A stretch of DNA of 64,000 nt, taken from IMG/VR virus record IMGVR_UViG_3300015261_000001, positions 1 through 64,000 of that record. The stretch is one strand, 5' to 3'. Below the pieces are notes generated by a model. The model searched no databases, was not told the origin of the DNA, and saw only the letters and a list, made by a program, of their open reading frames with translations. How positions within the stretch are numbered: position 1 is the stretch's first letter; every line of letters begins with the position of its first letter. The position numbers were made by a program, and so were the translations under genes. This document shows, piece after piece, positions 3,939 through 56,350 of this stretch.

Positions 3939-4385
3939 TTACGCCATGACACGAGCGGTATGTTTTTGCCCACGAATGAGTTCTTCCAGAAGACTGATCT
4001 CTTTCAAGTCAGCTTCCCGTTTACCTTCCTTCCGCGTCGGCAGCTTCGCCAGATAGCGTTTCTGCGTTAGCAAGGCAGAAGGGCTGTACGTCCAGACACC
4101 GTCAACACAAACGATCCCGGTATCGGGTTCGAACTCGTGGATATCAACGTCTGGCGCGTACTTGATCAAATCGGAAATACCTTCTTCCGTAATGACCAGA
4201 TGTTTCCCCGACAAGAACCGAAACACGCCAGTGGAAACGTCAACATCAAGGTCTTGGGTGTCCTGTCGGATACCAAACATCACCAGCGCAGATCCAGCTG
4301 AGAGGATGACATTACGTGCATCCTCGTTCAGCTCGCCTAACAATTGAGTATAACGTTCCACTACTTGTGCTTTGTCCATATTCAT
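3939..4385 (-). CDS. Pol-beta-type nucleotidyltransferase-fold protein, paralog 2 (DxD intact)
   Basis: VILSAGSALVMFGIRQDTQDLDVDV, plus a candidate third acidic residue in DVDIHE. Confidence 0.72.
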   Translation of the reverse strand: MNMDKAQVVERYTQLLGELNEDARNVILSAGSALVMFGIRQDTQDLDVDVSTGVFRFLSGKHLVITEEGISDLIKYAPDVDIHEFEPDTGIVCVDGVWTYSPSALLTQKRYLAKLPTRKEGKREADLKEISLLEELIRGQKHTARVMA

Positions 4386-8210: not shown

Positions 8211-8218
8211 CAACCTTA

Positions 8219-14782: not shown

Positions 14783-14838
14783 GAAGTAAACCTTTTGGAA
14801 AAGGAGGAGCAAGGCTGTTAACCCTGCTCCTCCAATGG

Positions 14839-17800: not shown

Positions 17801-18408
17801 AACGTCAGCAACATCGTCTTGTACACGTCCATGAGATGAATGAACAAATCATAGTAGTGGTCGATCTTCACCTGAATCAGCGGGCGACCGTGGTTACGAA
17901 CGGCGTCCACGATCATGTTCATCAGTTCGATGGTGTCTTGCCACGCCACGATGTCATACAACACACTGTGACCGTGCAGCTTAGGACGGAATACCACCGG
18001 CTTGTTGTGCAGGTTTTCCCACCAAACTGGACGATCATCGTTGGCAGCATTGATGATCAGTTGCAACAGAGTGCTGTCGAACAGGGAGAACTCACCGACG
18101 ACATCGTAATCCATCGTGCCTTCGGTAATGTTTTCATCCATCAGCTCGATGAGGCATCCAACTTCCATGGAAGTCAGATCGGTCAGACGAGGCATCAGTC
18201 GGAACATCCGATAATGCGTGTCGTAGATCATCGGTTCCCCGTTCGGGAAATACAGCTTCAGGCTGGTGACAAAGAACGGACTGTGCCGAGGAACAATAAC
18301 CCGGGTCCAAATCCCTGCTTCAACCTTGAACGGTTCACCACGCTTCTCGTTTTCAAGGTTCGAGTTGTCAATGTCGGTTTTGTATTCCCGGACTATTGGA
18401 AATTGCAT
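14839..18408 (-). CDS. Tail fibre-like virion protein (phiKZ gp145/gp146-like)
   Basis: PRHSPFF module, PISQFGNTNFIPPNIDGSFEGLG, and C-terminal SVYPEIGWVIF...DLRD...GNSIPASSG. Confidence 0.75.
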   Translation of the reverse strand: MQFPIVREYKTDIDNSNLENEKRGEPFKVEAGIWTRVIVPRHSPFFVTSLKLYFPNGEPMIYDTHYRMFRLMPRLTDLTSMEVGCLIELMDENITEGTMDYDVVGEFSLFDSTLLQLIINAANDDRPVWWENLHNKPVVFRPKLHGHSVLYDIVAWQDTIELMNMIVDAVRNHGRPLIQVKIDHYYDLFIHLMDVYKTMLLTFIQNHTDTEDEHGLTALQVHLEKVDNFATAIGAQALEPRSDLHLTVQGLQTIIDKYGFNSTEFLEAETLPISQFGNTNFIPPNIDGSFEGLGGVIETGGMALESDGTITYLCNRMDGRTRGLYFSVMENANSGSNITLTYTGFKYEHAKFEASGSNVDRIAQGSGHECILVGDSFQDAYYIGMTNGSLDPAKHVYSKINLRPLVDAIMPNPGAVKVADIFGMVSIALMADWVYIFLSANVPAPAANATVGMDLRYKHIFRVPVSSIKATIDVTAVKQLVSFMDADGVQVNNSPFWRWYTPIIDGNGAVTKGLYTYSPYPCNNMIGLYRSSLTLVAQDPSNAQNYAVKFISGHYAAYTSPSVNGAADQVPEINYDFNPYTGVFTRKSMSPVFNVNFAANPIVPPEYARTNEKYLLTFFYQCQGCNVLDDGRVVSAGAYGFSGFPRGGMVCKVTNSTTRYASVSRNWARGDDLKAIGGNVVEETMISPIASSVCPKALMYAPGGEYYTAGRKDRATQLGLYWKNVSGKLAVRPEIQNLYKGNIVSRPLTNDIRRINALPGMGGATISVPSSALDFAGIEVGESAFCVSAQKRYFDRETVGTGWTAPIGLDDIVLINGLNRRLEADGTLTLVPTSELLYPSNIVAALKNQVQFPATLAASRVPGIVTVCDPTYSNLARFGWLPVTVSIQYTGQLGSADQNTLFGTILNIQPTYSTSGGRYVVTGFTVINVSHWRGESRAMNTPYVQGSTEWSDTPLSSLGPMRIQYYLAGNTLSVYHGCGVMAQTPGDAYTIDFAMVFNDRTASHGWSSVTPVEHSSRGGGSCVTPDNGIGVIWGWDLTTGGAATLQNGTVNNPLLGSVYPEIGWVIFFKTRIKAVFNGKTYYLEPGNMDLRDLFPDPRWKTYYVYCVLDNGVAKYEIGTDKRLESAYQLWVATITTNERQILTIERYNVFAINGNRISELKRGNSIPASSGLANTEGQIPWIRSDELLP

Positions 18409-18422
18409 TTTCAGCTCCTGTC

Positions 18423-19178
18423 TTATTCACCGCCAAGAGGCAAAGTACCAGCAGCCAGTTGGCGAAACATTTCTTTGGCCACTTTCATCGAGATCATGAC
18501 GTTGTCGCTGTTGCCAGCAATGTCATCGGTGGTGGCTTTACGGGCGTTCGGAACCAGGTCAAGACCAATCATGGTTTTGTCAGCCATGTGTGCCTTGTCG
18601 AGAGTTTCCGCCATGTGTTCTTCAAGCATCTTCTTGACGCTGATCTGGTCGGTGCCGGTTTCCGTGATCGCCAGCAGCAGGTTCTTCAGGTACTCAACCA
18701 TGTCGAGGTAGTCGTAGGTTTGAGCAGCTGGTTGTTCGTGCGGATCAGGTGGGAAATCGAACGGTACATCGACCACATCAGACCAGTCGGCTTGACGAGG
18801 ACTGTTAACAATGTTCGCGACCAGAGTAGCGTAGGCAACCTCGTCGAGAATGAACGGACCGCCGATGGTGTCGTAGGCGGCAATCACTGGAGCGGCAACC
18901 GGCTTCAGCAGAATCACCGAACCATAGACGTTGCGCTTGAAGCGATTAATAAAACGATCGAACGTGTGACCGAAGATGTAGTCGATGCCAGGAACCAGTG
19001 GCTCGTTACTTCCTTGACGGAACAACTGGAAGTTGCGAGAGTAAAAAGGTGCTGCTCGTGGAACGAACTCGACTCGTGTACCGACACCGTTCGGCTTGAT
19101 TACTTCGTTGGGGATACGGCAGTCGACACGCTCCTGGAAGGGGTTCCAGCCGTAAACAATTGGTTGTGCCATTTTCAT
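18423..19178 (-). CDS. Short virion protein made of the N-terminal module of the fibre family
   Basis: PRAAPFY...YDTIGGPF...WSDVVDVPFDFPPDPHEQ...HMADKTMIGLDLVPNARKAT parallels the N-termini of 11189 and 14839. Confidence 0.7.
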   Translation of the reverse strand: MKMAQPIVYGWNPFQERVDCRIPNEVIKPNGVGTRVEFVPRAAPFYSRNFQLFRQGSNEPLVPGIDYIFGHTFDRFINRFKRNVYGSVILLKPVAAPVIAAYDTIGGPFILDEVAYATLVANIVNSPRQADWSDVVDVPFDFPPDPHEQPAAQTYDYLDMVEYLKNLLLAITETGTDQISVKKMLEEHMAETLDKAHMADKTMIGLDLVPNARKATTDDIAGNSDNVMISMKVAKEMFRQLAAGTLPLGGE

Positions 19179-26610: not shown

Positions 26611-29600
26611 ATGGTCGCTCCAACTCGCGGTACCACCAGAGGTAATCGACATGTCGACATCGCTCGGGTGCGCCAGGACCTCACGTCACTGAACCCTGTT
26701 ATTGCGAGCACTATGCGCAACGCTGTACCGCGCAACGGGCAGTCGCCAGAGGGTGATGAGGTTACCGGCAAACGCACCGTCAACCCGTTTAAACTGGAAC
26801 GGTTGAGCAACATCATCAGTAACAACATTAACGCAGCTACCGACCTGCGAACCATCACACCATACATTGATAAAGCGGAGCTGATCTGGCGGACAATCCT
26901 GCTCTATCCAAACGGGAAGCAGGACAAGATCCTTCGGTACGACACTCAACCCTCACCAAAGAAAAACGCAAAATTGCACAGCGAACTGTTGCCCATCTGG
27001 GACAACTACTTCACGAATGGCTATAAGATCGAGAAAGATTTAAAGAAGATTGTCAGCGATATTCTCATTAATACTGGGAGTTACACGCTGTTCAATTTGA
27101 GTCGTCCAGGCTTGGATTACTTGATCAACGGCAGTGAACTTGTTGAGGTTGCTGGTAACGAATCCTTCAAGGCTGATGCTACCCGGTTCTACGATGAAGA
27201 GTTTCGTAATGAAGCTGGCAAGGTCATCGTCAAGAACAAGGGTAAATTCATTCGTGACGCTGATGTAACTGTTGTTCCGGTGAGTGGTCTGGAAGCCATC
27301 TTCGGTGGCGCTGCTCCGTATCAGGCTGACGAAGTTAAGTTGTTCGGTAAAGAAGACCCGAACAACGATTTCGGCATCACCATCACTGACAACCCGGCTG
27401 TGCTGTACTTGCAGAAGTTCGGGCAAGTCAAGCGTCGGAAAGACGTTGAAAGTGTGACGGGGATGGAAAACCTGAACCTCATGATTCAATCCGCCTTGCA
27501 CAGTAAGGATGTGAATGATCGTGGGGATGATGGCGAGAACTACCTCGGTCCGAACGATCACCGCCCTACCAAAGGCAAGGGTCCGGCTAAACCGGTCGCT
27601 ACAACTCAGAACCTCACCGACAAACAAGTAGAGGAGTTGAGCAACAAGTTCTTCCCTACTCGTAATGTGGACAGCCAGACTATTCAGTTCGTCAAGCCTA
27701 ACGACGCATTGAAGGTTGCTCCTTACGGTCGTGGTCTGACTTGGCACGTACCGAGTGAGGCGGTTATTCCGATCCACTTGAACGGAAGCAACGGCACTCA
27801 GATTGACTTCATCTTTCTGACTGACCCGAATGACGGTAGCTTCCTGAAGAACACGAATGACTTCGAGTTCTATCAAGGGTTGAAGAAGAACAGCGACGGC
27901 ATTGCCAACAAGCCAAAGAACGGTAGCGGTAACAGCCTGATCTCCAGCCTTCGTGCAATTCAAGAAGGTAAGGAATGTGACTTCGACATGTCGGAGTTCG
28001 CAGATATGGCCAAGTCCAACATCGTCCGTCGTTTCATGCAGTCGATGGTCAGCGGTCGTGGTGACAACGTCAGCATTCAGCTCGACGAAGAAACCAACAA
28101 GATCTTCCTGCAACGGATGTTCCGTCGTCAAGGTATTCGCTGCTTGTATGTTCCTGGCGAAGCTGTTACCTACATGGCACTGAACTACAACCGTTTGGGT
28201 ATTGGTCAATCGCTGACCCAGATGGCGAAGATGCACATCGCTCGTTTGGCAGCTATGGACCTCGCGGATGCAATGGCCAACTTGGAAGCGGCCACGCCGC
28301 ACAGCCTGATGACCATTAACGTCAACGAGAAGTCGCCTGAGCCGTTTGCTGACATCGCCGCAGCCCGTGCTACGTACTTCGAGGCTAACCCTCGTCTGCA
28401 CAGCATCCTGGCCACTGCACAGTTGTCGGTTCCACAGATCGTGGATGCTTTGCGTGAATCGTCTCTGACGGTTAAGGTGAATGCGGGTGACAACCCTCAT
28501 ATCCCTGTTCACGATATCCAACTCGAACACATGGACAAAACCAACTTCAAGCCGATTGATCAAAATAGCCGGCAAGAACTGTTGAATAAAGTCTCCAACT
28601 ATCTTCACTTGTCGAAGAGCTGGTTGGATGTGTCGGACGATCAGAACAACTTTGCGATCGAGGCTCTGGCCGAACACCAAATGCTTCTGAACCAGGTGGT
28701 TAACTGGCAGGAAGAGTTGGGTGATTTCCTTGTTGACTTCCAGCGTAAGCATGCTCAGGTTTGTGCTCCTTTGATGAAGGAGTTGATCGACAAGATCATG
28801 GAAAACAAAACCATGTGGATGCCGGACAGCAAGGAGAAGATCGAAGGTTCCGATGATACTGTTGTGAAGACAATCCTGTTGGACTTCCTGAACAACATGC
28901 AGTGCCTGTTCCCCACACCTACCAGCATTGAAACCACTACCAAGATTAAGGACAGTCTGGATGTGGTTAAAGATCTGGTGGACAAGTGGGTCGAGATGGC
29001 TGGTCACTCGGGTAACTTGGAACAAATCGCTAAGCTCTTGGGCTTTGGTGACTCCGAGGCGAAAGATCTGGAAATGGTTAAGGCTCAGATTAAGTCTGTG
29101 TTCTTGGCCGAAGCTTTCCGTCGTTACAACTTGCCAATGCCATTCGACGATATCATCAACGACGGTAAAGGCGGTGGTCTGGCTTCGATGGTTAACGCTA
29201 TCGTGCATCAACGTCAGAACATTGGTGAGTTCTTGGCAACCATGATGGTCGGTATCAGCGAAGTTGATGCCAAGGTTCTCAAGACACACGCCAAGAAGAT
29301 CGACAAGGCTGTAGCTAACTTGGCTAAGGCTAAGGAGGCAGCTGAAGGTGAAGCCGAGGTTGATTCTTCTTTGACCAACGGCGATCCAAATGGTGATGGT
29401 TTGAGCGCTGATGACGCCCCGGCGCCTGAAGACGGTCTCGATACCGATGCACCACCAGTGGATGACGACACCCCACCTGTTGATGATCCAGAAGCTCCGG
29501 TAGAAGAGGAGGAGGAAGAGGAAGAACCTGAGCCAAGTCCTGACGATAACGCCCCACCAGCAGATGGTGATGCGCCAGCGCCAGCGGGTGACGGAACTGA

Positions 29601-29637
29601 TCCGACCAAGAACGACCCTACCAAAAACCCGTTCTAA
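26611..29637 (+). CDS. Putative portal protein (phiKZ gp129-like)
   Basis: Start revised to the ATG at 26611 (GAGGT SD). Position relative to the capsid and nvRNAP genes fits. It has G-x-E sites (AGNES, SGLEA, TGMEN), a stem-clip-stem-like pattern (GIGQSL...ARLAAMDLADAMANLEAATP...LLNKVSNYLHL) and an acidic Pro-rich C-terminal tail. Confidence 0.7.
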   Translation: MVAPTRGTTRGNRHVDIARVRQDLTSLNPVIASTMRNAVPRNGQSPEGDEVTGKRTVNPFKLERLSNIISNNINAATDLRTITPYIDKAELIWRTILLYPNGKQDKILRYDTQPSPKKNAKLHSELLPIWDNYFTNGYKIEKDLKKIVSDILINTGSYTLFNLSRPGLDYLINGSELVEVAGNESFKADATRFYDEEFRNEAGKVIVKNKGKFIRDADVTVVPVSGLEAIFGGAAPYQADEVKLFGKEDPNNDFGITITDNPAVLYLQKFGQVKRRKDVESVTGMENLNLMIQSALHSKDVNDRGDDGENYLGPNDHRPTKGKGPAKPVATTQNLTDKQVEELSNKFFPTRNVDSQTIQFVKPNDALKVAPYGRGLTWHVPSEAVIPIHLNGSNGTQIDFIFLTDPNDGSFLKNTNDFEFYQGLKKNSDGIANKPKNGSGNSLISSLRAIQEGKECDFDMSEFADMAKSNIVRRFMQSMVSGRGDNVSIQLDEETNKIFLQRMFRRQGIRCLYVPGEAVTYMALNYNRLGIGQSLTQMAKMHIARLAAMDLADAMANLEAATPHSLMTINVNEKSPEPFADIAAARATYFEANPRLHSILATAQLSVPQIVDALRESSLTVKVNAGDNPHIPVHDIQLEHMDKTNFKPIDQNSRQELLNKVSNYLHLSKSWLDVSDDQNNFAIEALAEHQMLLNQVVNWQEELGDFLVDFQRKHAQVCAPLMKELIDKIMENKTMWMPDSKEKIEGSDDTVVKTILLDFLNNMQCLFPTPTSIETTTKIKDSLDVVKDLVDKWVEMAGHSGNLEQIAKLLGFGDSEAKDLEMVKAQIKSVFLAEAFRRYNLPMPFDDIINDGKGGGLASMVNAIVHQRQNIGEFLATMMVGISEVDAKVLKTHAKKIDKAVANLAKAKEAAEGEAEVDSSLTNGDPNGDGLSADDAPAPEDGLDTDAPPVDDDTPPVDDPEAPVEEEEEEEEPEPSPDDNAPPADGDAPAPAGDGTDPTKNDPTKNPF

Positions 29638-38438: not shown

Positions 38439-40631
38439 TTATGGTGCGTTTGGGTCTACAACTGGAACGTTGGCGCCTGCATCACCGATGTTGTCGACGA
38501 TAACGCGCTTCGCGGCCAGCTTGTTGATCAGACCTTCGTTGCTCAGGAACTCGTCGGCGTCGGTGATCTCGAGAGTACCGATGATGACGTTGAGTGCCCA
38601 GTGCTTGTAGGTCGGCAGGGTCATGACCACACCGAAGTCCTGGTCGCCACGAGTGACGTTGCCTTGAACCACGATGTTTTCTTTCGACACGACGACACCG
38701 ATGCCGGCGAGCGGGTTGATCTGCTCGGAGCTGGAGTCGTTGTAAGGAACGATGATCATGCGGCCGATTTCGCTGTCGAAGTTGGTTTCAACGACTTCGA
38801 GGTTGTCGATCGGGCCGATGGTACGAGCATCACCGGAACGGAAGATGAAACGGCTGAGGTTCTGGTGAACGACGCAGGTCCATTTGTTCTTGGTGTTGCC
38901 GCTCGAGTATTCGGCGATAGCAGCCAGGCCAGAACGGGTGTTCAGCGCGGCGACGATGTCGGCGATCTCGTTGGTGATGGCAGAGCTGATTGCGTTGAAC
39001 ACATCGCCCGAACCGTTGGCGGAGATTACTTCCGACAGGGTCAGGGAACGGCGCACAGCAGTCGCGGTCACGAAGTGCTGACCGGCCAGAACTTCAGAAC
39101 CCTGGGTGTTGGAAACAACCGGAGAACCGTCGATGCTGGTGATGTAGTCGATGTGCTTGGTCGCTTCGTCGAACGCGTGCTTGGAGCACTGGTTGTTGAT
39201 GACGATCGACATGTGGGTCAACGCGAAGTCCAGCGACGCTTGGTTCACATCGTCCTTGGCGATCGGGTACTTGACCGAGATCGGGGAACGACGTTGTACC
39301 GACAGGTGTTTCTTGGCGTCGTAAACTTCAATGCGGTAGCCGAAGTTGCCGCGGTTGGTGTTGCTCACGTTCTGGGTGGTGCCAGCAGCCACAACCGAAC
39401 CAGCGGTCAGGGAGTGGATCAGCGCCTTTTGAACGCTGTCGGCGTTACCGACCTTAACGATGTTGGCAGGGTTGTTCAGTGGACGCAGAGCGAACACGGT
39501 AACCGAGCCGGAGTTCAGGCTGAACTCGTTGGTCTGACGCTGGAAAGTACCGGTCAGGGTAACGGACAGCAGCGGCTCGTAGCCGGCGTCTTTGAAGGTC
39601 TTGAACAGAACTTCGCCGATGGCGTTGCCGTCTTTGTCGGTAACCGAGAAACCAGGCAGTTGCTTGATGCGCAGGTTCAGAGCACGGTCATCGGTGGTCT
39701 GAGCGTTGCTGGCTGGTGCGAACGTGTTGTTCGACATGGCCGCGGTGTTGATGAAGAAGTTCTTGTCGGTACCGGCCAGTTTGGCGGCGACGGCAACAGA
39801 CTTCACGGAAATCGAGTTGGACTCGAGTTCGTCAGTCGAAGTCCATGGACGCTGACCAGGAACTTGGGTCAGAGCCAGCAGGTTCGGAACGTTGACCGGA
39901 ACAGCGAACATCTGGGTGTTGTGGGTGGAACGACCGTAGGCGTCGCCCTGCATGTAGCTGACCGGGGTCGGTGCAACCAGAGCAGTAGGGGCGAAGAACA
40001 GGCGGTTGTCGCTCTGAGCGTCGTCAGGGAAGACGGTGTGCACAGACAGCACTTCGTCTTTGAACATTTCGCCGGAGCGCAGCAGGCCGAAGATCGGACG
40101 CAGATCCGACGCCGATTGCCAGGCGGTGTTACCGTAGGCGTAGGTACCCAGGCCAGCAGCACGAACGATCAGCTCGGCGCCTTCTTCCTGGTAGCCAACA
40201 CCGACGGTGGCGAACAGAGCTTCAGCGGCTTTGGTTTGCAGGTGGGACTGGGCGTTCAGGGTCAGGTTGGCTGCCTTGATGTCCTGTTCCTTACCCTGGA
40301 AGTTCTGCATCGAGAAACCTTCCAGACCGGTCACAGCGCTCAGACCGTCTTTCGCCTCGTCGAAGATCTTCACGAGTTCGTGAGGAGTCTCTTTGAGGTT
40401 TTGGCGTTTCAGAACGCCGAGGATGGCATCCTGGGTACGGCCGCTGTGGGTGCCGATGACTTGTTGCACGATCAGAGCTTCGTTACCTTGAACGCTGCTC
40501 AGAGCGGTTCCTACGTCGGTGAAGCTTTCATTGCCGGTAACGGTAGCCAGTCCGCCGGAGGTCAGCGATTGACGGATCGCGGCGAACAGGTTTTTACCCC
40601 CGTTCAGGGAGGTTTGAAGTTGCTTGGCCAT
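38439..40631 (-). CDS. Major capsid protein (phiKZ gp120-like)
   Basis: 730 aa with very strong codon bias. Propeptide with G-x-E sites (TGNES, QGNEA, TGLEGF) followed by NAQSHLQTKAAEALFATV. Lies two genes from DnaB, as in phiKZ. Confidence 0.85.
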   Translation of the reverse strand: MAKQLQTSLNGGKNLFAAIRQSLTSGGLATVTGNESFTDVGTALSSVQGNEALIVQQVIGTHSGRTQDAILGVLKRQNLKETPHELVKIFDEAKDGLSAVTGLEGFSMQNFQGKEQDIKAANLTLNAQSHLQTKAAEALFATVGVGYQEEGAELIVRAAGLGTYAYGNTAWQSASDLRPIFGLLRSGEMFKDEVLSVHTVFPDDAQSDNRLFFAPTALVAPTPVSYMQGDAYGRSTHNTQMFAVPVNVPNLLALTQVPGQRPWTSTDELESNSISVKSVAVAAKLAGTDKNFFINTAAMSNNTFAPASNAQTTDDRALNLRIKQLPGFSVTDKDGNAIGEVLFKTFKDAGYEPLLSVTLTGTFQRQTNEFSLNSGSVTVFALRPLNNPANIVKVGNADSVQKALIHSLTAGSVVAAGTTQNVSNTNRGNFGYRIEVYDAKKHLSVQRRSPISVKYPIAKDDVNQASLDFALTHMSIVINNQCSKHAFDEATKHIDYITSIDGSPVVSNTQGSEVLAGQHFVTATAVRRSLTLSEVISANGSGDVFNAISSAITNEIADIVAALNTRSGLAAIAEYSSGNTKNKWTCVVHQNLSRFIFRSGDARTIGPIDNLEVVETNFDSEIGRMIIVPYNDSSSEQINPLAGIGVVVSKENIVVQGNVTRGDQDFGVVMTLPTYKHWALNVIIGTLEITDADEFLSNEGLINKLAAKRVIVDNIGDAGANVPVVDPNAP

Positions 40632-40716
40632 AATGAGTCAGGTCCTGTGGAAAATTTGAGAACAATCGCTTTTCTATTGCGCAATAGAACTGCACATAAA
40701 ATATAATGAGCAATCC

Positions 40717-42926: not shown

Positions 42927-43445
42927 TTACGCCGCGGTAGCAATGATCTGCTTGTAACCGCGTTCAGCCAATTCTTCATCACCTTCAAAGATGTATTTGA
43001 ATTGAGCCAGGTAAGCTTCACGCTCCCATGGGAATTCCACATAACCTTGAAGGGTAACGTTAAAGTGCTGACCTTCCCAGATCATGTGGCCAGCTTCTAC
43101 GATAGCCAGACGGCCATCCAGGACTTGTTGTACGTGAGTAAGCTCATGCACAAGGTAAGACCGACGGAAACGCTCACGCGCATCCTCAGGTATCTGCTTG
43201 CTCTCATTCACCATGGCATCTGGATAAATGATCAGTGCTAACTCGCGGCCATGCTTGGGAAGGATTTCTAATGTTTCTGGATTGATCTGAAGTACGACCC
43301 CGCCAACTTCACCGTAAGCTTCTACGGCTGGGAACATGCCGCGTGTAGCCATGCAAACGTGGATGTCGTATTGTTCCAACATCGCAACACCCTCTTCACC
43401 AAAGAGAGCGAGCACTTCTTCCATTTTGGTTCGCAACAGTTTCAT
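42927..43445 (-). CDS. Zincin-like metallopeptidase (HExxH)
   Basis: LVHELTHVQQ...PWEREAY. Confidence 0.75.
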   Translation of the reverse strand: MKLLRTKMEEVLALFGEEGVAMLEQYDIHVCMATRGMFPAVEAYGEVGGVVLQINPETLEILPKHGRELALIIYPDAMVNESKQIPEDARERFRRSYLVHELTHVQQVLDGRLAIVEAGHMIWEGQHFNVTLQGYVEFPWEREAYLAQFKYIFEGDEELAERGYKQIIATAA

Positions 43446-43884: not shown

Positions 43885-43901
43885 GTAATATAGGTCTGAA
43901 A
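43885..43901 (-). promoter_or_regulatory. phiKZ-type early promoter (TTTCAGACCTATATTAC)
   Basis: Exact TATATTAC core, intergenic, upstream of 43810. Confidence 0.65.
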
Positions 43902-43907
43902 TGAAGT

Positions 43908-44032
43908 ATAAGTTAAATAAACCCCTCGCCCCCGGAAAGGCCGGAAAGGCGAGGGGAGAAAAACATAAGTTAAATCCCCCTCACCTCGGGATACCGAGGG
44001 AGGGGGTTAATTGAGTTGGTGTAGTTAAATAA
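43908..44032. repeat. Periodic AGTTAAAT motif (x3) alternating with GC-rich hairpins
   Basis: AGTTAAAT at 43911, 43968 and 44023, with hairpins CCCCTCGCC..GGCGAGGGG and CCCCCTC(A)CCTCGG..CCGAGGGAGGGGG between them. Confidence 0.65.
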
Positions 44033-44051: not shown

Positions 44052-44891
44052 CTATTTGCTGATAGGCCGTTGTCCGTAAAGCTCCGGGCTATCGATGTCG
44101 ATGTTCTTGCTGATACCACGGAGTGTTCCCAAACCTTCGATGGTCAGAATGTCGGCCCCGCTGTTCCAGGCTTCAGTGACTCGGGAGATCAGGTGGTCCA
44201 GTGGATCAACGCCCTCTTCCAACTGTGTTTCTTCAACACAGTTACCCATGTCGATCGACAACGTTGGTTTCTGTGCAGGGACAGTCAGGGACGATTCGCG
44301 CAGAGCTTCCACGATCTGTGGAACAGAAAGTTGCGCGGTATTCAGGGTTTCCCGCAGACTAGGGTGGGCATCCCAGAACTTTTGAATCTCGGCCAGGTCT
44401 TCTGGAACAATGTCGTTGAACGTCTTTTCCATCGGGGAAACAACGCGTTCGCCGGTCGTCATGTCTTCGGCGTAACCTTCTTTCGACGGAGGATCTACTT
44501 TGTCGAGCAGGTAATGAATCGTGGCAGACAAGTAGTCGAGATGTTCGCCAAGATGCTGCAAATAGGTATCTGGGTCCAGAGAAGCACAAGGACCGTGCTC
44601 TTCGGTAATCACCCGACTAGGGATGTGTTTAAACCCGTCGGTACGAATAGCCGCCAGCAACTCTTTGGTTTCCTGAGTGTTGAAGATGGTGTAGCCCAGT
44701 TGCTGAAAGAATTTCTTCAATGCTTCGCGGATGCCACCTGGATAGGTGTCCAGAGTGTGGCCATCCAGTGCTTTACGCATCGGGCAATTTTCATCCACCC
44801 AAGCGGCATTCCACCCGTAGTTTTTTGGTTGTTCTTCATTAGTCCGGCCAATAGCATCCATTGCCGCATTCAGATCTTTTTGCGAAGTCAT
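44052..44891 (-). CDS. Accessory protein carrying a portal-derived segment
   Basis: Contains TAQLSVPQIVEALRESSLTV, against portal TAQLSVPQIVDALRESSLTV. Confidence 0.8.
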   Translation of the reverse strand: MTSQKDLNAAMDAIGRTNEEQPKNYGWNAAWVDENCPMRKALDGHTLDTYPGGIREALKKFFQQLGYTIFNTQETKELLAAIRTDGFKHIPSRVITEEHGPCASLDPDTYLQHLGEHLDYLSATIHYLLDKVDPPSKEGYAEDMTTGERVVSPMEKTFNDIVPEDLAEIQKFWDAHPSLRETLNTAQLSVPQIVEALRESSLTVPAQKPTLSIDMGNCVEETQLEEGVDPLDHLISRVTEAWNSGADILTIEGLGTLRGISKNIDIDSPELYGQRPISK

Positions 44892-44915
44892 TGCGTTACT
44901 CTCTGTCAGAAAGGT

Positions 44916-45059
44916 TTATTTGGATTCAAACGACGGACGTGCTTCCATCAACTGGATTCGTTCGAAAGTCCGTTGCATTTGTTCGAGTACTTCGTTTTGT
45001 ACAGGCTCCTGCGGAACCTCGATGATTGGAGCGGGCTGATTCTCTTCTTGATCATTCAT
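44916..45059 (-). CDS. Small acidic protein (47 aa)
   Basis: Below the ORF-track cutoff. MNDQEENQPAPIIEVPQEPVQNEVLEQMQRTFERIQLMEARPSFESK, with an AGGT SD-like motif, filling the gap upstream of 44891. Confidence 0.55.
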   Translation of the reverse strand: MNDQEENQPAPIIEVPQEPVQNEVLEQMQRTFERIQLMEARPSFESK

Positions 45060-45207
45060 GATCTAACCTACCGGTTAAAGGAATAAGGCTTAGGTAAGCT
45101 ACGCTCACCTGCTGTCTAAGAGCAAAAATACTTCCCTACTCTCCCACCTGCTTTCGCAAGTAGCTCTCAATCCAGTATAGGTATCTACACCGGACTGAAA
45201 GAAAACC

Positions 45208-46548
45208 TTACACTTGAGCAGTGAACTCTTCGTTGTTAAGGAAGAGGGTTAAAGAGGAGTGTTCCCGGAAGACCATGTCTGGACTCTCAGTATCCTTCTG
45301 TAGCTCGCTACGAGCCCCTAGGAGCGTTCCTTCCTTGTATTTCAACACATCCCCACTCATGTAGAAGAAGCGCAGCGGCATAGCGGGTTGCAGCACGTCA
45401 TGGTCCGAGTTGTTCCACTGAATGCTTTCTACGTCCCCGTCATTAAAGGAGTTAGCCGACAAGTGTTTGCAGAGGTTGTTAGTAGGGGCGTCCAAGAAGG
45501 GCGCAATCTCTTCACCACTGGAACGCTTAGCCGTCTGGTACTCGCTCAGGCTGTCTTGGCGGGTCGCAGCCGCCTGACCGCTGCCGTAGTAAGCACCTGT
45601 CTCCCCCATCACCGCATCAGAGCTTAGGATGCGTTTACCGGTACCTTCGTTCTGCCTGACGATGTCATTACCGTCAATATGCTTACCTTTACCTGTAGAC
45701 AGGATCGTGGTGACCTTGCCTTGGGTAAAGTGCGTGGCGTGCAGTGTAGGGAACACGTTCTCAGGAAGCCGGTAAATGTTCAGCACCTTACGCGCCTGTT
45801 CATACCGACCAGACTTGAACAGAGGATAGATCCACCACATTCCTTTGTAGTAGTACATCCCGAACCCTTTACTGTAAATACCGAACTCATCGTGGTTCTG
45901 CAACCAACGTCCCAGCTGAGGCAACGGAATAGCCGACGGAATGATTACCATCTGGAAAGCCCGAGCGTTGTCGATAGGTCGTTCGATATTCACACCACGG
46001 AAAGCGTCAGCGCCAGTTAGTTGAAGTTTCTTCCCGTACTTCGACAACTGGTAATGCAGAACGCTATCCAACGTGGACATCAGGTGTCGGTCAGACACCA
46101 TCTCGTTCTTCAGGATTGAGTAACCAGTCTCCATCAACTGGAACTTGACGGTAATCATGTTGATATCGTCTTTGGCACTCAGGTTTGCTGTTTGGGTGTT
46201 GTTACCAGCCATCTCCGGGTTACTGTCTCCCAGAGGAATCGCACGGTAACGCTTCATGGTTTGACTCAACCCCTGACGCTCAACAACCTCGATGTACAGA
46301 TTGTCCTTATTCGGGAGAATCTTGTTCATGTAGATACCCGGTTGAATCTGCGCCTGAATACGGAGGTCATCCGAAGCGTTGATGGCGTACAGACTCATCC
46401 GGGAAATGCCTGTTGGCATAATCAACGAGATTTGCTGGTGGTCAGGGAGAATAACCATTGCGGACAGTCTAATCTTCTTGTCGTTTCGCTTGGCTTCTAC
46501 TGAGTTAGCAAAGGCGACAAGGTTAGATAACGGACGTGGCAAATCCAT
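45208..46548 (-). CDS. Virion structural protein, possibly baseplate hub
   Basis: 446-aa ORF in a structural operon with a GIYSKGFGMYY...WWIYPLF motif. Confidence 0.6.
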   Translation of the reverse strand: MDLPRPLSNLVAFANSVEAKRNDKKIRLSAMVILPDHQQISLIMPTGISRMSLYAINASDDLRIQAQIQPGIYMNKILPNKDNLYIEVVERQGLSQTMKRYRAIPLGDSNPEMAGNNTQTANLSAKDDINMITVKFQLMETGYSILKNEMVSDRHLMSTLDSVLHYQLSKYGKKLQLTGADAFRGVNIERPIDNARAFQMVIIPSAIPLPQLGRWLQNHDEFGIYSKGFGMYYYKGMWWIYPLFKSGRYEQARKVLNIYRLPENVFPTLHATHFTQGKVTTILSTGKGKHIDGNDIVRQNEGTGKRILSSDAVMGETGAYYGSGQAAATRQDSLSEYQTAKRSSGEEIAPFLDAPTNNLCKHLSANSFNDGDVESIQWNNSDHDVLQPAMPLRFFYMSGDVLKYKEGTLLGARSELQKDTESPDMVFREHSSLTLFLNNEEFTAQV

Positions 46549-46551
46549 CGG

Positions 46552-47274
46552 TTATTTCCCTGTTTTAAAGACCCACTCTCCGAGGTTGTGCACGGAGTCA
46601 GGTGTGGCGAGGCTATCAGCAACCGCCTTGTTGGTGAGGATTGGGTGGTCAGCAAAGGACGTACCACCGAACTCCGCTTGTTGGATGCCGTCCAAATGAC
46701 TGAACCAGCTGATGCCGTCTTCGGTAGTAGAGCCAGCGGCAGCCATACCAAACAACTGCGCCAGCCCCAACAGGTTCGCTCGGTTGGCTGCTTTCTCGTC
46801 GATCACCTTGCGGTAAACGTGGGCGTTGTTCAGGTAGGACTTGATCCGCTTGTACTCGCCAAAGACGCTGTACGCCATCAACTCCAAGTTGCGGAGTTCA
46901 TCCATCGGTGGCAACGGGAACTCAGGTGCCTTATGGAACAACTCACACCAGAGCTGCAAGTACTCTTGAATCGATTCGTAGATCTCGACAATCGCGTTGT
47001 TGGGGTCGCGAAACCCCAACTCCTTCTCACTCACCAAGTTAGGCAAGATGTCGATAATTTGCGGAATCTTGTACAGTCGCTCTTGGTACTCGTCGTAATG
47101 GTTGGGGTCGTTAACGAACCCGTCCTGGGTGTACTCCGGTCTGTCCCGCAGTTCCTCGATCGACATCAACATCTTGGGTGTTACATAAACGGCGTACAAC
47201 CGGTTATTCAAGATGTTGAAAAGAAAGAAGATACGGTCCCGGATAAAGTTGTATCGACTGAGCGGTAGACTCAC
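46552..47274 (-). CDS. Conserved hypothetical protein
   Basis: Start revised to the GTG at 47274, which overlaps the upstream TGA and has a GGAGG SD. Confidence 0.65.
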   Translation of the reverse strand: MSLPLSRYNFIRDRIFFLFNILNNRLYAVYVTPKMLMSIEELRDRPEYTQDGFVNDPNHYDEYQERLYKIPQIIDILPNLVSEKELGFRDPNNAIVEIYESIQEYLQLWCELFHKAPEFPLPPMDELRNLELMAYSVFGEYKRIKSYLNNAHVYRKVIDEKAANRANLLGLAQLFGMAAAGSTTEDGISWFSHLDGIQQAEFGGTSFADHPILTNKAVADSLATPDSVHNLGEWVFKTGK

Positions 47275-48566
47275 AGAGGTCCTCCTATCCGCCGAGCAAA
47301 GCCCAACAGGCGCAGAATGATCGCGCCATGATAAAGCTGCTCCTTCGGTGTCAGGGTGAAGTAAGTTTTGCAATACGCCAACAACCGTTCGTGGTCAATG
47401 AGCTGATCACGATAGGACGAGTAAACGAGGTTCTCGAACTCGCCTTCTGGCTGGCCTTTATAGAAGCCTGCCGAGAACAAGTAAGTGATTTGTTCCTCGT
47501 TACCCGGTTGTAGGATGGGATACCCATCGTTGTTGTAATAGAGCTTGTATTGCTTGAAGTCTTTCGGGTTGGTGGTGATGAACCATTTGATCTTGCTGGA
47601 GCGCAGGTTGCCGTACAGGCGAGTGTTTTGCAGACGGCTGGTTTCCATGCGTGCGGCTTGGTTGTCGCAGATCTGGAGCAGGTTCATGTCGCAACGCAGC
47701 AACACTTCCCAGATGTTCACCGTCCCCCAACGACCTTTCTCCAAGCCACCATACTGAATGGAGAACTGGCTGATTGGTGGGTAGAGCGTACGGGCTTCAG
47801 GGTGAAGTACCGCGCACAGGAAGTTCACCAGATACGGGTCATACACCATGTCGACGTTCGGGTCAGTGCCGTACGGGAACACGATGGTGCGTTCAGGGTT
47901 CCAGTAGAACTCGCGCATGATGTAGTTGGAGATGGTCAGATTCCAGTTGAACAGTTCCTGACCGGTTTGTTCTTCTGCGGTGGTGATCAGCGAGTGACCA
48001 CCGTGCAGCGCCGAATCCTTCGAATAGACTTTACGGTCTACTGTTTTACCGACCAGAATGTCGTTGTCAGTTTTGGTCAAGAAGCCCAGCTGACGAACTT
48101 GAATCTGGTAAACCTTGTTCGCAGTGAAGTTGCGGATTTCAGGCTGTTCGACAATGGCAAACAAACCAGCGTGACCATCACCGATGTCCATGATCATAAC
48201 GTCATGGATGATTGGTGCTACATCGAAGATAATCCAGACGCTGTAAATGACCGTACTTTCACCGGTTGTCGGGTCATAGCTGAACGAGCCATCACCTTCA
48301 ATCTTGATCGACAGTCGCTCGATACTGGTGTAGCTCTGGTAAGTGCCGACACCACCCGGTGCAAACGGTTTAGGTTCTTCACCGTCTTGCAGAAACTGGC
48401 GGTAGTAATGAGTCAGTCGAGGACGACCGGTCACCATCGTTAACAAGCTGAGTTCGGGCTGCCAAGTCGAATCAACAATGGAGTGACGGAACGTTTCACT
48501 GTAAATCTTCGGAGCTTCCGGTTTAGGTGCTTCCGGCGCTCCTACTGGGCTAACTGCTAATGGCAT
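47271..48566 (-). CDS. Virion structural protein, possibly neck/head completion
   Basis: 431-aa ORF in the structural operon, with a GAGGT SD. Confidence 0.6.
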   Translation of the reverse strand: MPLAVSPVGAPEAPKPEAPKIYSETFRHSIVDSTWQPELSLLTMVTGRPRLTHYYRQFLQDGEEPKPFAPGGVGTYQSYTSIERLSIKIEGDGSFSYDPTTGESTVIYSVWIIFDVAPIIHDVMIMDIGDGHAGLFAIVEQPEIRNFTANKVYQIQVRQLGFLTKTDNDILVGKTVDRKVYSKDSALHGGHSLITTAEEQTGQELFNWNLTISNYIMREFYWNPERTIVFPYGTDPNVDMVYDPYLVNFLCAVLHPEARTLYPPISQFSIQYGGLEKGRWGTVNIWEVLLRCDMNLLQICDNQAARMETSRLQNTRLYGNLRSSKIKWFITTNPKDFKQYKLYYNNDGYPILQPGNEEQITYLFSAGFYKGQPEGEFENLVYSSYRDQLIDHERLLAYCKTYFTLTPKEQLYHGAIILRLLGFARRIGGPL

Positions 48567-54000: not shown

Positions 54001-55287
54001 TCAGATGTGAGCTTGAACAGCGTCCATGGTCTGGCGAGCCAGAGCGGCGTACAGTTTTTCCATGGTGATGGTCAGGCCGGAAGCCGAAACGAAGATCGCC
54101 TTAACCAGGTCGATTGCTTTGCCGTTGGCTTCTTTGCCGTCGCTGTTGGACTTGGTCTTGACGTTCAGAGTACCGACCACGCGATCACGCTCAGCTTTGG
54201 AGAACTTCTGCTGAACCTTGCTCGAACGGATTTCTTCGACGTAGGACTTGACCGAGGCCAGGGCGCCTTGCAGTGCAGCTGGAGTCGAGACCTTGGTGGC
54301 CACTTCGCCGGTGCTGAACTTCTTGGCGTCTTCGGTTTTACCGAAGGAGATTTTGATCGAGCGAGCAGCAGCAACGATCTCGGCGTCGGTTTCGTACTTC
54401 TCGGAGAAGACCGCGAAGATACGGAAACCAGCGTGAGCGCCCAGGACGGTGTGCTTGTCGGCCGAGTCAGTTTTCTCGCTGACTTTACCAACGGCTTTTG
54501 CAACGCCTTTGATGTCAGCGATCAGCGCGCCGTAGGCAGACTTGAACTTGGCGGCGTCGATGCCGTCGAGGTTCTTGCCCAGGTCCATGAAGGCTGGCAG
54601 AGCAGTGGCGGTCAGTTCGAACATCGAGTGGCCGGCCAGAGTTTCCAGACCTTTCAGGCCGTCGGTGGCGTAGTCGAGGCCGACGTTCCAGCCGCCCAGC
54701 TTGATCTTGTCCTTGATGGTGGCGGTCTTCACGCGCTCGCTCAGTTGCTTTTGACGGCGTTCCAGAGCGGAGGCGGTGTTGAACATGCCCACGAAGAAGT
54801 TGATCACGGTGTTGAAGATGTGCTTGATGTACTCGACAGCTTTGCTGGCACCGGCTTTGATGGTGCCCATGAAGCCTTCGATACCGGACACGGATGCCAG
54901 GCGAGCGGTGGCCGCATCGGAGATGGATTCAGCACCCAGGGTGGCGAAGTTTTGGCCGCCCAGTTTGGCGTTCAGTTTCAGAGCGCGGTTGTACTTCTGA
55001 GCGAAAGCCAGGGACGAGAACTGACCGGAGGCCAACAGACCTTCCATGCCGCCGACTTCTTCCTGAAGCTCTTCAACAGCTTCTTCGTGCTCGACCAGTT
55101 CTTCTTTGATTTCGACAACAGCTTCAGCCAGCTGCTCAACTTCAGCAATGGCTTCGGCAACGTCGGCACGCACTTCTTCTACAGCGGCTTCGGTTACGAC
55201 GACTTCGCCGTTGCCTTCGCCACCAGGTTCGCCGGTGCCACCGGCCAGAAGATCTTCAACACCTTGGTACAGAGAGAGAATGCTCAT
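54001..55287 (-). CDS. Abundant inner-head protein, gp93-97-like paralog
   Basis: Glu-rich propeptide, with QGVED, GGMEG, LGAES and SGIE|GFMGTIKAGASKAVEYIKHIFNTVINFF. Strong codon bias. Confidence 0.78.
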   Translation of the reverse strand: MSILSLYQGVEDLLAGGTGEPGGEGNGEVVVTEAAVEEVRADVAEAIAEVEQLAEAVVEIKEELVEHEEAVEELQEEVGGMEGLLASGQFSSLAFAQKYNRALKLNAKLGGQNFATLGAESISDAATARLASVSGIEGFMGTIKAGASKAVEYIKHIFNTVINFFVGMFNTASALERRQKQLSERVKTATIKDKIKLGGWNVGLDYATDGLKGLETLAGHSMFELTATALPAFMDLGKNLDGIDAAKFKSAYGALIADIKGVAKAVGKVSEKTDSADKHTVLGAHAGFRIFAVFSEKYETDAEIVAAARSIKISFGKTEDAKKFSTGEVATKVSTPAALQGALASVKSYVEEIRSSKVQQKFSKAERDRVVGTLNVKTKSNSDGKEANGKAIDLVKAIFVSASGLTITMEKLYAALARQTMDAVQAHI

Positions 55288-55336
55288 GAGCACATGTTCC
55301 TTTGTTCGTTAACGAATGGATTGTTTATAAACAGGT

Positions 55337-56350
55337 TTAAGCGAAAACCCCGAGCACACCATGAATGTACTTGTCGGTATACCCGACGACACGCGGGGTG
55401 AATCCGCTATAAAATGCGAGAGCACCCATATTGCCTGCCATCAGCTTTTCTGCTTCACCAACTACGGTTTTGCTTACCTGATCCAGCTGACTCAGGTTAC
55501 CGTCAACTCCTTTGACCATTTCGGCCCAGGATTTGATGAATCCAAGGTAGTTGTCATAGGATTCCTTAACACGCTTGTGGAGGGCGTTAACCTTATCCAG
55601 CTTGTTAAGGATTTCCGAGATTTCCGACTTGGACATGGTCAGGGTTTTAGCCTCACCTTCGGGGGCTTCCCCGGCGATGGAGTACTTCGGCGAACCCTGG
55701 TTGCTGAAGATGAAGTAGCGACCACCTGGGAGAACGTCCGACTTGAACGCATTGCCCATGTGGTTACCCAGATTGAAGTCCGGGTACTTCAGGTCATTGA
55801 ACTCGTCGATGACCGAATGAACTTGTTCAGACTTGTTGGCACCCTTCAATTTCTTGAGAGTCACCAACTCCTTATCCAAGTAAGCGATAAGGTCCTTGGT
55901 ATGCTTATCGAAAGCTTCGAGAACTTTGATGAGCGTATCCATGTCCTGCAAAATATGGTCAGGGTCACCTTTCGAGGTAATCGTTGCAACCTTGGCAGCC
56001 GACAACTTAATGTCTTTATCCGCCACCTTGTTCACATCTTTGAGGATGTTTTTGATCAAGGAAGAGTTGTCATCGAACGACTTGGTTACCGCGTTCCCTG
56101 CCAGAGTTACCCCTTTCAAGAAACCATCGATAGCCTTGCCGCCTACCCACTTGGTGACGCTGAACAACCCACGCCCCACACTGGTGAGGGTGTCGAGAGC
56201 ATCTTCTTTCAGATCCTCGCAACCCGCAACAATAGGAGCGCGGTCAGAGCCCATGATTTTACCCAACTCGATCAGATCGCGTTGGAGGCCGATGAGGGTC
56301 TGGTGGTGTTCCAGTGCATCGGCGTAGCTGCGTTTATGACCGGCGCTCAT
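55337..56350 (-). CDS. Inner-head protein, gp93-97-like paralog
   Basis: Start revised to MSAGHK (AAAGGA SD). Has an AGCE|D site and SDVLPGGRYF, paralleling SVELMGGAYF in 56362. Confidence 0.7.
   Translation of the reverse strand: MSAGHKRSYADALEHHQTLIGLQRDLIELGKIMGSDRAPIVAGCEDLKEDALDTLTSVGRGLFSVTKWVGGKAIDGFLKGVTLAGNAVTKSFDDNSSLIKNILKDVNKVADKDIKLSAAKVATITSKGDPDHILQDMDTLIKVLEAFDKHTKDLIAYLDKELVTLKKLKGANKSEQVHSVIDEFNDLKYPDFNLGNHMGNAFKSDVLPGGRYFIFSNQGSPKYSIAGEAPEGEAKTLTMSKSEISEILNKLDKVNALHKRVKESYDNYLGFIKSWAEMVKGVDGNLSQLDQVSKTVVGEAEKLMAGNMGALAFYSGFTPRVVGYTDKYIHGVLGVFA

What the first reader, a model, noticed from the sequence alone, without database searches (positions are those of the whole stretch)
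44280..44339. Accessory protein carries a selected copy of the phage's own portal clip-domain segment: candidate portal mimic or decoy
Seen: the 279-aa ORF 44052-44891 contains TAQLSVPQIVEALRESSLTV (44280-44339, minus strand), while the putative portal contains TAQLSVPQIVDALRESSLTV (28414-28473). That is 19/20 identical. By codon, 9 are identical, 10 differ synonymously and 1 differs conservatively (D/E), so the peptide rather than the DNA appears conserved. Weaker similarity extends upstream (SPMEKTFNDI...FWDAHPSL vs SPEPFADI...YFEANPRL) and perhaps downstream (QLE...PLD vs QLE...PID). The rest of the protein looks unrelated to the portal. Knowledge: in portals, the segment between the two stem helices is the clip, which docks terminase and neck adaptors, and the portal fold is the trigger for Avs4-type STAND immune sensors. 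Inference: the copied segment lies in the clip. The protein could be a decoy that titrates portal-sensing defences, a competitor or timer for terminase or neck binding, or an exclusion factor against related phages.
Basis: partly seen in the sequence, partly recalled or inferred. Interest (0 to 1): 0.9.

Follow-up and report, generated by a model that had tools for sequence, protein, structure and literature searches.

The report
Portal clip fragment inside accessory protein
A small, fast-evolving accessory protein of an uncultured jumbo phage carries an old copy of part of the phage portal's docking collar, and its 20-residue core is still almost identical to the portal's, so it may act as a stand-in for that collar, though its closest relatives have lost the piece.

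Summary
ORF 44052-44891 (-) and the portal gene share a 20-residue stretch that is 19/20 identical. The DNA is 48/60 identical: 9 identical codons, 10 synonymous, 1 D/E. Homology extends over about 57-80 residues (E=2e-11).

- **Portal call:** 26611-29637 is a phiKZ gp129 / Goslar gp36-type portal.
- **Location:** the stretch is the last helix plus strand of the clip.
- **Age:** the DNA identity is near what random synonymous codons give (42.9±2.9) and no higher than to ten other portals (43-49/60). The copy is old, and the phage's own portal cannot be named as donor.
- **Conservation:** the 20-mer is nearly invariant in more than 100 related portals, so tracking of the cognate portal cannot be tested.
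- **Gene context:** the ORF sits in a variable island and evolves far faster than its neighbours (dN 0.48 against 0.01-0.17).
- **Relatives:** its orthologues keep only remnants of the segment (IADAHREASLTV, QVVDAIRASS) or none.

My reading is an ancient capture of clip-coding sequence, with the core under portal-like purifying selection in this lineage only. That fits a clip surrogate that binds a clip partner. The partner is unknown, and an Avs4 decoy in particular is unsupported.

The parts
44052..44891 (-). Accessory gene, 279 aa. It has an N-terminal family domain, a portal-clip-like module and a C-terminal tail.
   Evidence: ORF listed. The identical protein occurs on 8 assembled contigs. 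Syntenic orthologues are P0002, P0003 and P0121. No Pfam, PHROG or PADLOC family matches.
44466..44789 (-). N-terminal helical domain (aa 35-142), shared by a small family of positional orthologues. Motif: PGGIR..LKK...TKELL.A..TDGF..IP...LLDK.
   Evidence: phmmer over 1.8 billion representatives found only P0002-P0006. The profile search added P0121 and P0122. AF2 predicts helices at pLDDT 57-72.
44196..44438 (-). Portal clip-like module (aa 152-232).
   Evidence: BLASTP to the window's own portal, E=2e-11. Alignments to other portals run to aa 232-239. tblastn hits only the portal genes of RisingSun/Joad (aa 170-232) and the EL group (aa 172-204). A clip HMM built from 114 portals scores E=1.3e-14.
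44280..44339 (-). Core 20-mer TAQLSVPQIVEALRESSLTV (aa 185-204).
   Evidence: 19/20 residues and 48/60 bases identical to the portal. Predicted helix at 190-199.
26611..29637 (+). Portal gene of the phiKZ gp129 / Goslar gp36 type. The database gene call (P0007, 974 aa) implies a start 34 codons later, at about 26713 (computed, not read from the sequence).
   Evidence: phrog_3004 E=1.6e-245. PDB portal chains match at E=1e-31 to 5e-33. 114 homologues were found.
28291..28560 (+). Portal clip region between the two predicted stem helices.
   Evidence: AF2 secondary structure, P0007 numbering: stem helix 497-526, strand 531-537, helices 544-558, 560-568 and 574-584, strands 585-591 and 601-606, stem helix 617-631. 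Goslar gp36 stem+clip spans 520-642.
28414..28473 (+). Portal 20-mer TAQLSVPQIVDALRESSLTV: the end of one helix, a loop, the last clip helix and the start of a strand.
   Evidence: It is the fifth most conserved 20-residue block of the portal, with mean identity 0.81-0.83 against 0.53 overall. It is near-invariant in more than 100 portals.
44916..45059 (-). 47-aa ORF directly upstream, probably co-transcribed. It is present in the three phages with the long-form accessory protein and absent next to the short form P0121.
43922..44006 (-). Two strong hairpins after the ORF's stop codon, each followed by TTTAACTTAT. They probably mark the end of the transcription unit.
   Evidence: Sequence. RNA fold -54.2 kcal/mol, z=-5.6. 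The motif occurs twice in the window against 0.1 expected.

Best explanation
The 279-aa protein belongs to a small, fast-evolving family of accessory proteins. The family occupies a variable slot between the late structural block and the helicase gene in EL-related jumbo phages.

Shown: an ancestor of the long-form members captured about 80 codons of a portal gene. These encode the clip (strand, two helices, loop, helix, strand). The event is old enough that synonymous sites are now saturated.

Shown: since then the flanks of the captured piece have diverged, even at residues that are invariant in portals. The 20-residue helix-strand core has stayed at 19/20.

Inferred: in this lineage the core is under purifying selection as tight as in the portal itself. 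The simplest cause is that it makes the same contact as in the portal, so the protein acts as a free, monomeric stand-in for the clip and binds something that normally binds the clip.

Inferred, weaker: the gene sits in a hypervariable island and its orthologues gain and lose the module. This favours a competitive or decoy role over a core assembly role. Candidates are titrating a host factor that recognises the clip, or occupying terminase or adaptor.
For: - **Homology and uniqueness:**
- **Portal identity and clip location:**
- **Age:** 48/60 identical bases against 42.9±2.9 expected from random synonymous codons (P=0.06). Ten other portals score 43-49/60. No closer donor was found in IMG/VR or the JGI metagenomes.
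- **Ancestry within the family:** P0002 and P0003 each give their best HSP against the portal at this same site. The clip HMM scores them at E=7e-6 and 9e-4.
- **Divergence after capture:** the ORF has H where portals have invariant N559, and it lacks the invariant N594.
- **Fast evolution:** ORF dN is 0.48 against 0.012-0.17 for the neighbours, between the window and L001. DNA identity falls from 86.5% to 67% or less at the ORF start. At that rate I estimate roughly 8-10 replacements in 20 residues; 1 is seen.
- **Matching constraint pattern:** the core is also the most conserved part of the clip in portals.
- **Real gene:** syntenic orthologues exist, and tandem hairpins follow the stop codon.
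- **Precedent:** a host defence protein is known to bind a portal clip.
Against: - Only one lineage carries the intact core. P0002 comes from a phage whose helicase is 99% identical, and it has deleted 21 residues covering 16 of the 20.
- P0003 is degraded. P0121 lacks the module although its phage's portal (P0015) keeps the 20-mer; the pairing rests on matching contig length only.
- No complex could be modelled. The AF2 model of the ORF is poor (pLDDT 46.8) and fold searches returned nothing.
- The core could be conserved for folding or self-association rather than for mimicry.
- There are no expression data and no known partner.
- The rate argument was applied to a segment that had been picked out because it is conserved.
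Confidence: 0.42

Rival explanations
1. Captured fragment with no mimic function. The clip piece was picked up by illegitimate recombination and now serves only as a structural element of the accessory protein, for example a folding core or a self-association strand. Its conservation reflects folding constraints and not a shared partner with the portal.
For: Orthologues delete or degrade it without losing the reading frame. The conserved part of the family is the N-terminal domain. No partner is known. The P0001/P0002-specific block EGVDPL.HLI..V.EAW..G.D.L.IEG next to the module is well conserved and is not portal-like.
Against: Folding constraints alone rarely hold 19 of 20 residues, including solvent-type positions (T, Q, S, R, E, S, S), while adjacent helices of the same module drift to about 30% identity. 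The pattern of constraint copies that seen in portals.
Confidence: 0.25
2. Recent patch transfer. A short gene-conversion tract from a portal gene, either the phage's own or that of a co-infecting relative not yet sampled, refreshed a degenerate ancestral motif. The near-identity would then be recent history and not selection.
For: The drop from 19/20 to about 30% identity at the edges is sharp. The longest run of identical bases with the own portal is 17, against 8-13 for other portals (P about 0.02 under random synonymous codons). The island shows mosaic behaviour. P0002 lacks exactly a 21-residue block.
Against: There are 12 differences in 60 bases to the own portal and at least 11 to every other portal examined, which is about the level of synonymous saturation. 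No closer donor exists in IMG/VR or the JGI metagenomes. The flanks are also portal-derived and colinear without gaps, so the whole module, not just the core, came from a portal.
Confidence: 0.13
3. Assembly or timing factor. The module docks onto the portal ring or onto the phage's own terminase or adaptor. It would regulate packaging or neck attachment as a normal part of morphogenesis.
For: In solved relatives the clip is the docking site for the adaptor, and for terminase in general portal knowledge (quoted). The gene lies at the end of the neck/baseplate gene block, next to homologues of the stopper gp99 and the spoke gp101.
Against: Morphogenetic factors are normally conserved. This gene is absent from most of the more than 100 related phages, whose portals keep the 20-mer. 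It also evolves 3-40 times faster than its neighbours.
Confidence: 0.12
4. Avs4-type decoy. The protein titrates STAND sensors that recognise the portal fold.
For: Portal proteins do trigger Avs4 and Avs11. The gene has the genomic look of a counter-defence gene.
Against: Avs sensors are described as recognising whole folds through extended interfaces. The ORF has at most about 80 clip-like residues and no wing, stem or crown. A decoy that bound such a sensor might activate it instead of blocking it. Nothing here tests the idea.
Confidence: 0.05

Closest known systems
Clip domain of Chimalliviridae-type portals (phiKZ gp129, PDB 9XPE; Goslar gp36, PDB chain 11ed_J)
   Same: ORF residues 152-232 are homologous to the clip. 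The 20-residue helix-strand core is 19/20 identical to the window's own portal and to the family consensus.
   Different: The ORF has no wing, stem or crown. Its N-terminal domain is unrelated to portals: hhalign finds only the short motif, at probability 2.4%. It cannot be a portal subunit. Residues invariant in portals are replaced in the flanks of the module.
Clip-sensing defence SpbK and its trigger, the SPbeta portal YonE (PMC11984713)
   Same: It shows that a host immune protein can bind a portal through the clip. That makes a free clip-like module a plausible competitor.
   Different: The known counter-defence there, Nip, binds SpbK and is not a clip mimic. The phage and host are unrelated to this one. 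No SpbK-like sensor is known for this phage's unknown host.
Avs4/Avs11 portal-sensing STAND NTPases (bioRxiv 10.64898/2026.01.04.697583)
   Same: The portal is a recognised immune trigger.
   Different: Recognition is fold-wide over extended interfaces, and the ORF reproduces only a small part of the fold.
Fast-evolving accessory genes in variable islands of phage genomes (the concept as in bioRxiv 10.1101/2023.04.06.535777; I saw only its abstract)
   Same: The gene sits in a variable slot flanked by conserved genes. It shows strong rate acceleration, domain gain and loss, and a narrow distribution.
   Different: Function has not been tested. I know of no accessory protein that carries a piece of its phage's portal, and the literature searches found none.

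Membership tests
phiKZ gp129-type portal (for 26611-29637) | Full-length homology to the portal family profile | tested here: met
   phrog_3004 E=1.6e-245 over residues 13-989. 114 homologues of 966-1087 aa.
phiKZ gp129-type portal (for 26611-29637) | Homology to portal chains seen as dodecamers in solved virions | tested here: met
   9xpe_M PHIKZ129 (12 chains), 11ed_J Goslar portal gp36 and 36za_o8 (12 chains), E=1e-31 to 5e-33.
phiKZ gp129-type portal (for 26611-29637) | Stem helix, clip, stem helix topology, with the 20-mer inside the clip | tested here: met
   The segment aligns to Goslar gp36 581-600, inside the stem+clip span 520-642. AF2 secondary structure places it between helices 497-526 and 617-631 (the model's confidence is low, so only the topology is used).
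Portal protein (for ORF 44052-44891) | Wing, stem and crown domains, and a length compatible with a portal subunit | tested here: not met
   279 aa. The similarity is confined to aa 152-232. The profile-profile comparison finds nothing else.
Accessory-protein family of the gp101-helicase island (P0001-P0006, P0121, P0122) | Conserved N-terminal helical domain and the same genomic slot | tested here: met
   for the domain. for synteny.
Portal-clip mimic or decoy (functional class) | The mimicking element is conserved across homologues or co-varies with the cognate portal | tested here: not met
   P0002 lacks 16 of the 20 residues. P0003 is degraded. P0121 lacks it although its probable cognate portal P0015 keeps it. 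Co-variation cannot be tested because the portal 20-mer is near-invariant.
Portal-clip mimic or decoy (functional class) | Purifying selection on the element in the carrier lineage | tested here: met
   One replacement in 20 residues despite saturated synonymous sites and an ORF-wide dN of 0.48. The flanks have diverged at residues invariant in portals.
Portal-clip mimic or decoy (functional class) | Physical binding to a clip partner (terminase, adaptor, portal or host sensor) | not testable with these tools
   No multimer modelling or coordinates were available. The monomer model has pLDDT 46.8.
Known anti-phage defence proteins (PADLOC) | A match to any PADLOC model | tested here: not met
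   No hit at E<=0.1.

The most novel reading that the evidence does not exclude
A jumbo phage encodes a free-standing surrogate of its portal's clip. The protein either soaks up a host sensor that detects the exposed clip, or captures the terminase or adaptor of co-infecting relatives. This would be a decoy built from the phage's own structural gene. The gain and loss of the module among close relatives would then record an ongoing arms race.
Probability: 0.18. Interest if true: 0.85.

Novelty: new variant of a known kind. Interest (0 to 1): 0.5.

Why it matters
Phage structural proteins are major triggers of bacterial immunity, and the portal clip is the hub for terminase and neck docking. 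If an accessory protein really works as a detached clip, it would be the first example I know of in which a phage reuses a piece of its own portal as a competitor or decoy. It would also give a small, tractable probe for what binds the clip in nucleus-forming jumbo phages, where packaging takes place at the phage nucleus surface. Even without a function, the case is a clean natural experiment. The same 20 residues sit in two very different proteins, the DNA is saturated with synonymous changes, and the peptide is intact. That marks those residues as the functional core of the clip.

Tried and rejected
- **Family libraries:** Pfam, PHROGs and PADLOC give nothing for the ORF.
- **PDB sequence search:** it gives only weak hits of the EAWNSGADILTIEG stretch to designed TIM barrels, with no stretch significant on its own. 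I treat these as chance.
- **Structure:** AF2 on the 6-sequence family alignment gave pLDDT 46.8. Foldseek against PDB and BFVD gave no hit at E<=0.001. The AF2 portal model was also poor (53.2), so I used only its secondary structure.
- **Profile comparison:** hhalign of the family profile against the portal profile is not significant (probability 2.4%), because the alignment treats the 21-residue block as an insert.
- **Cognate portal of P0002:** I looked for it among the closest portals. P0008 and P0010 come from other samples, so co-variation could not be tested.
- **Other accessory copies:** I scanned for them with a back-translated pattern. IMG/VR gave 7 stretches and the JGI metagenomes gave 10. 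Only portals, the window's own ORF and three unrelated chance matches were found.
- **Distant relatives:** single-protein locus searches in IMG/VR returned only the window's own contig.
- **Shared DNA element:** I considered that the two regions share a regulatory site or RNA. The differences sit at synonymous positions, so I rejected this.
- **Wrong strand:** I considered that the + strand ORF 44070-45086 is the real gene. Orthologues, synteny and the strand of the neighbours all support the minus-strand ORF, so I rejected this.

Full report
**The observation**

On the minus strand, 44280-44339 encodes TAQLSVPQIVEALRESSLTV, residues 185-204 of the 279-aa ORF 44052-44891. On the plus strand, 28414-28473 encodes TAQLSVPQIVDALRESSLTV inside the long ORF ending at 29637. 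The peptides match at 19/20 and the DNA at 48/60, with 9 identical codons, 10 synonymous and 1 D/E change.

BLASTP extends the match to ORF 152-204 against portal 565-621, with 30/57 identities and E=2e-11.

I ran an all-against-all comparison of the 225 ORFs of at least 60 aa in the window. This is the only local match between otherwise unrelated genes.

**The large gene**

It is the portal.
- It matches phrog_3004 over its whole length (E=1.6e-245).
- It matches the portal chains of three solved jumbo-phage virions, including phiKZ gp129 (9XPE) and Goslar gp36.
- The neighbouring genes and the DNA place the window in an uncultured jumbo phage of about 238 kb (IMGVR_UViG_3300015261_000001).
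- The nearest cultured relatives are the Pseudomonas phage EL group. The 446-aa neighbour is 70% identical to its EL-group homologue, and otherwise there is only weak DNA similarity to PaBG.

**Where the segment sits**

In the phmmer alignment the 20-mer corresponds to Goslar gp36 581-600. The Goslar paper assigns residues 520-642 to the stem and clip.

The AF2 model of the portal is of low confidence, but its secondary structure gives the expected order. In P0007 numbering this is:
- long stem helix 497-526
- strand 531-537
- helices 544-558, 560-568 and 574-584
- strands 585-591 and 601-606
- second stem helix 617-631

The 20-mer is therefore the loop, the last clip helix (PQIVDALRESS) and the start of the following strand (LTVKV).

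**How conserved the segment is in portals**

Among 114 portal homologues, down to about 55% identity in this region, the 20-mer is nearly invariant, and dozens carry it exactly. It is the fifth most conserved 20-residue block of the whole protein. Two things follow. The ORF's copy matches the family consensus and not specifically its own portal.

**Age and donor**

If two sequences encode this peptide with codons drawn at random from the phage's usage, they share 42.9±2.9 of 60 bases. The observed 48 is not significantly higher (P=0.06).

The ORF's 60 bases are 43-49/60 identical to ten other portals, including ones 91-95% identical in protein to the window's portal. The own portal does not stand out. 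At protein level the best-matching clip is P0061, not the own portal.

Degenerate-pattern scans of IMG/VR and the JGI metagenomes found no closer donor and no second accessory copy.

One weak hint of a link to the own portal is a 17-base identical run, against 8-13 for the others (P about 0.02). I do not rely on it.

The copy is therefore old, or its donor is unsampled.

**The accessory gene and its relatives**

An exhaustive phmmer search of 1.8 billion representatives, plus a profile search, found only seven relatives. All that could be placed occupy the same slot: after the baseplate-spoke gene (phiKZ gp101 homologue) and before the helicase gene on the opposite strand. In EL-group phages that slot holds unrelated small genes.

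What the family shares is an N-terminal helical domain (aa 35-142). The C-terminal half varies:
- **P0002** is 300 aa. Its phage's helicase is 99% identical and its spoke protein 92% identical to the window's. It lacks 21 residues covering 16 of the 20 and keeps ...DAH|REASLTV.
- **P0003** keeps VAQVVDAIRASS.
- **Both** give their best HSP against the portal at exactly this site. A clip HMM scores them at E=7e-6 and 9e-4.
- **The short forms** (P0004-6, P0121, P0122) have nothing significant. P0121's phage probably has portal P0015, which keeps the 20-mer. This pairing rests on both proteins having a longest contig of 228,330 bp.

The module is therefore ancestral to the long forms and has been eroded in every sampled relative except the window's.

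**Rates**

Between the window and L001 the neighbours have dN 0.012-0.17 and dS 0.57-1.4. The ORF has dN 0.48 with saturated dS. DNA identity falls from 86.5% to 67% or less exactly at the ORF's start codon. The gene is real, since it is conserved in frame, syntenic and followed by two strong hairpins, but it evolves 3-40 times faster than its surroundings.

Against that background my own estimate is roughly 8-10 replacements in a 20-residue stretch of this age. One is seen. The flanks of the same captured module have drifted to about 30% identity, including at residues invariant in portals: N559 is H in the ORF, and N594 is missing. I infer purifying selection on the core in this lineage. The caveat is that the segment was picked out because it is conserved.

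**Mechanism**

Shown: an old capture of clip-coding sequence by an accessory gene, a portal-like pattern of constraint within it, and loss in relatives.

Inferred: the core keeps the contact it makes in the portal, so the protein acts as a detached clip.

In solved relatives the stem and clip contact the adaptor. In portals generally the clip also docks terminase (quoted). At least one host defence protein, SpbK, binds a portal through its clip. Because the gene behaves like a fast-evolving island gene and not a conserved morphogenetic factor, I favour a competitive or decoy role. The partner is unknown.

The Avs4 version is the least likely. Avs sensors are described as reading whole folds over extended interfaces, and the ORF has no wing, stem or crown.

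The rivals are laid out with their tests in the rival section: a structural scaffold with no mimicry, a recent conversion patch from an unsampled portal, and an assembly or timing factor.

**Limits**

There are no coordinates or multimer modelling, a poor monomer model, no expression data, an unknown host, and only one lineage with the intact element.

**Verdict**

The portal and clip assignments are correct. 'Selected copy' is supported for this lineage. 'Own portal', 'tracks the cognate portal' and 'Avs decoy' are not supported.

Noticed in passing
window 42927-43445 (-): The 172-aa protein two genes downstream carries an HExxH-type motif (VHELTHV). It has weak matches to PHROGs of unknown function and a faint M48-peptidase-like PADLOC hit (E=0.024). 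It may be a small metallopeptidase. It is conserved at 68-76% in L001 and L002.
   Followed up: partly
window 43885-44006 (-): Two strong GC-rich hairpins follow the ORF's stop codon, each followed by TTTAACTTAT (2 occurrences against 0.1 expected). Next comes CTATATTAC just upstream of the 114-aa gene. From memory, this resembles the AT-rich early-promoter core of phiKZ-like phages. It looks like a terminator-promoter junction.
   Followed up: partly
window 44916-45059 (-): A 47-aa acidic ORF precedes the accessory gene in the three phages with the long form (window, L001, L002). It is absent next to the short form P0121 in L024. It may be a partner of the long form.
   Followed up: partly
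window 27040-29289 (-), 38601-40706 (+), 44070-45086 (+), 54007-55401 (+), 7233-8213 (-): Very long open frames run antisense to several real genes: 749 aa opposite the portal, 701 aa opposite the putative capsid gene and 338 aa opposite the accessory ORF. This is probably a codon-usage effect and not coding sequence. It could mislead gene callers.
   Followed up: no
window 11189-14812 (-), 14839-18408 (-), 18423-19178 (-): Adjacent large paralogues of 1207 and 1189 aa share 28% identity over 774 residues (E=9e-67). A third, shorter relative follows. Their identity was not determined.
   Followed up: no
window 3475-3927 (-) and 3939-4385 (-): A tandem pair of paralogues of about 150 aa shares 27% identity (E=1e-8).
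   Followed up: no
window 45208-46548 (-) and 47271-48566 (-): These neighbours were identified from solved virions. The 446-aa protein is the inner-peripheral baseplate spoke (phiKZ gp101 / Goslar gp220). The 431-aa protein is the stopper (phiKZ gp99 / Goslar gp50).
   Followed up: yes
L001 3107-3604: The close relative that carries P0002 has an extra HNH-type gene of 165 aa (weak PF13392 hit) between the 172-aa gene and the helicase. The window lacks it. This is another sign that the island is a recombination hotspot.
   Followed up: no
window 44129-44170 (-), ORF aa 241-254: The stretch AWNSGADILTIEGL weakly resembles the repeated KEAWKKGADILIVD unit of de novo designed TIM barrels in the PDB (E=0.0017 for the whole sequence, no single stretch significant). 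It is conserved in P0002. I treat it as chance.
   Followed up: partly
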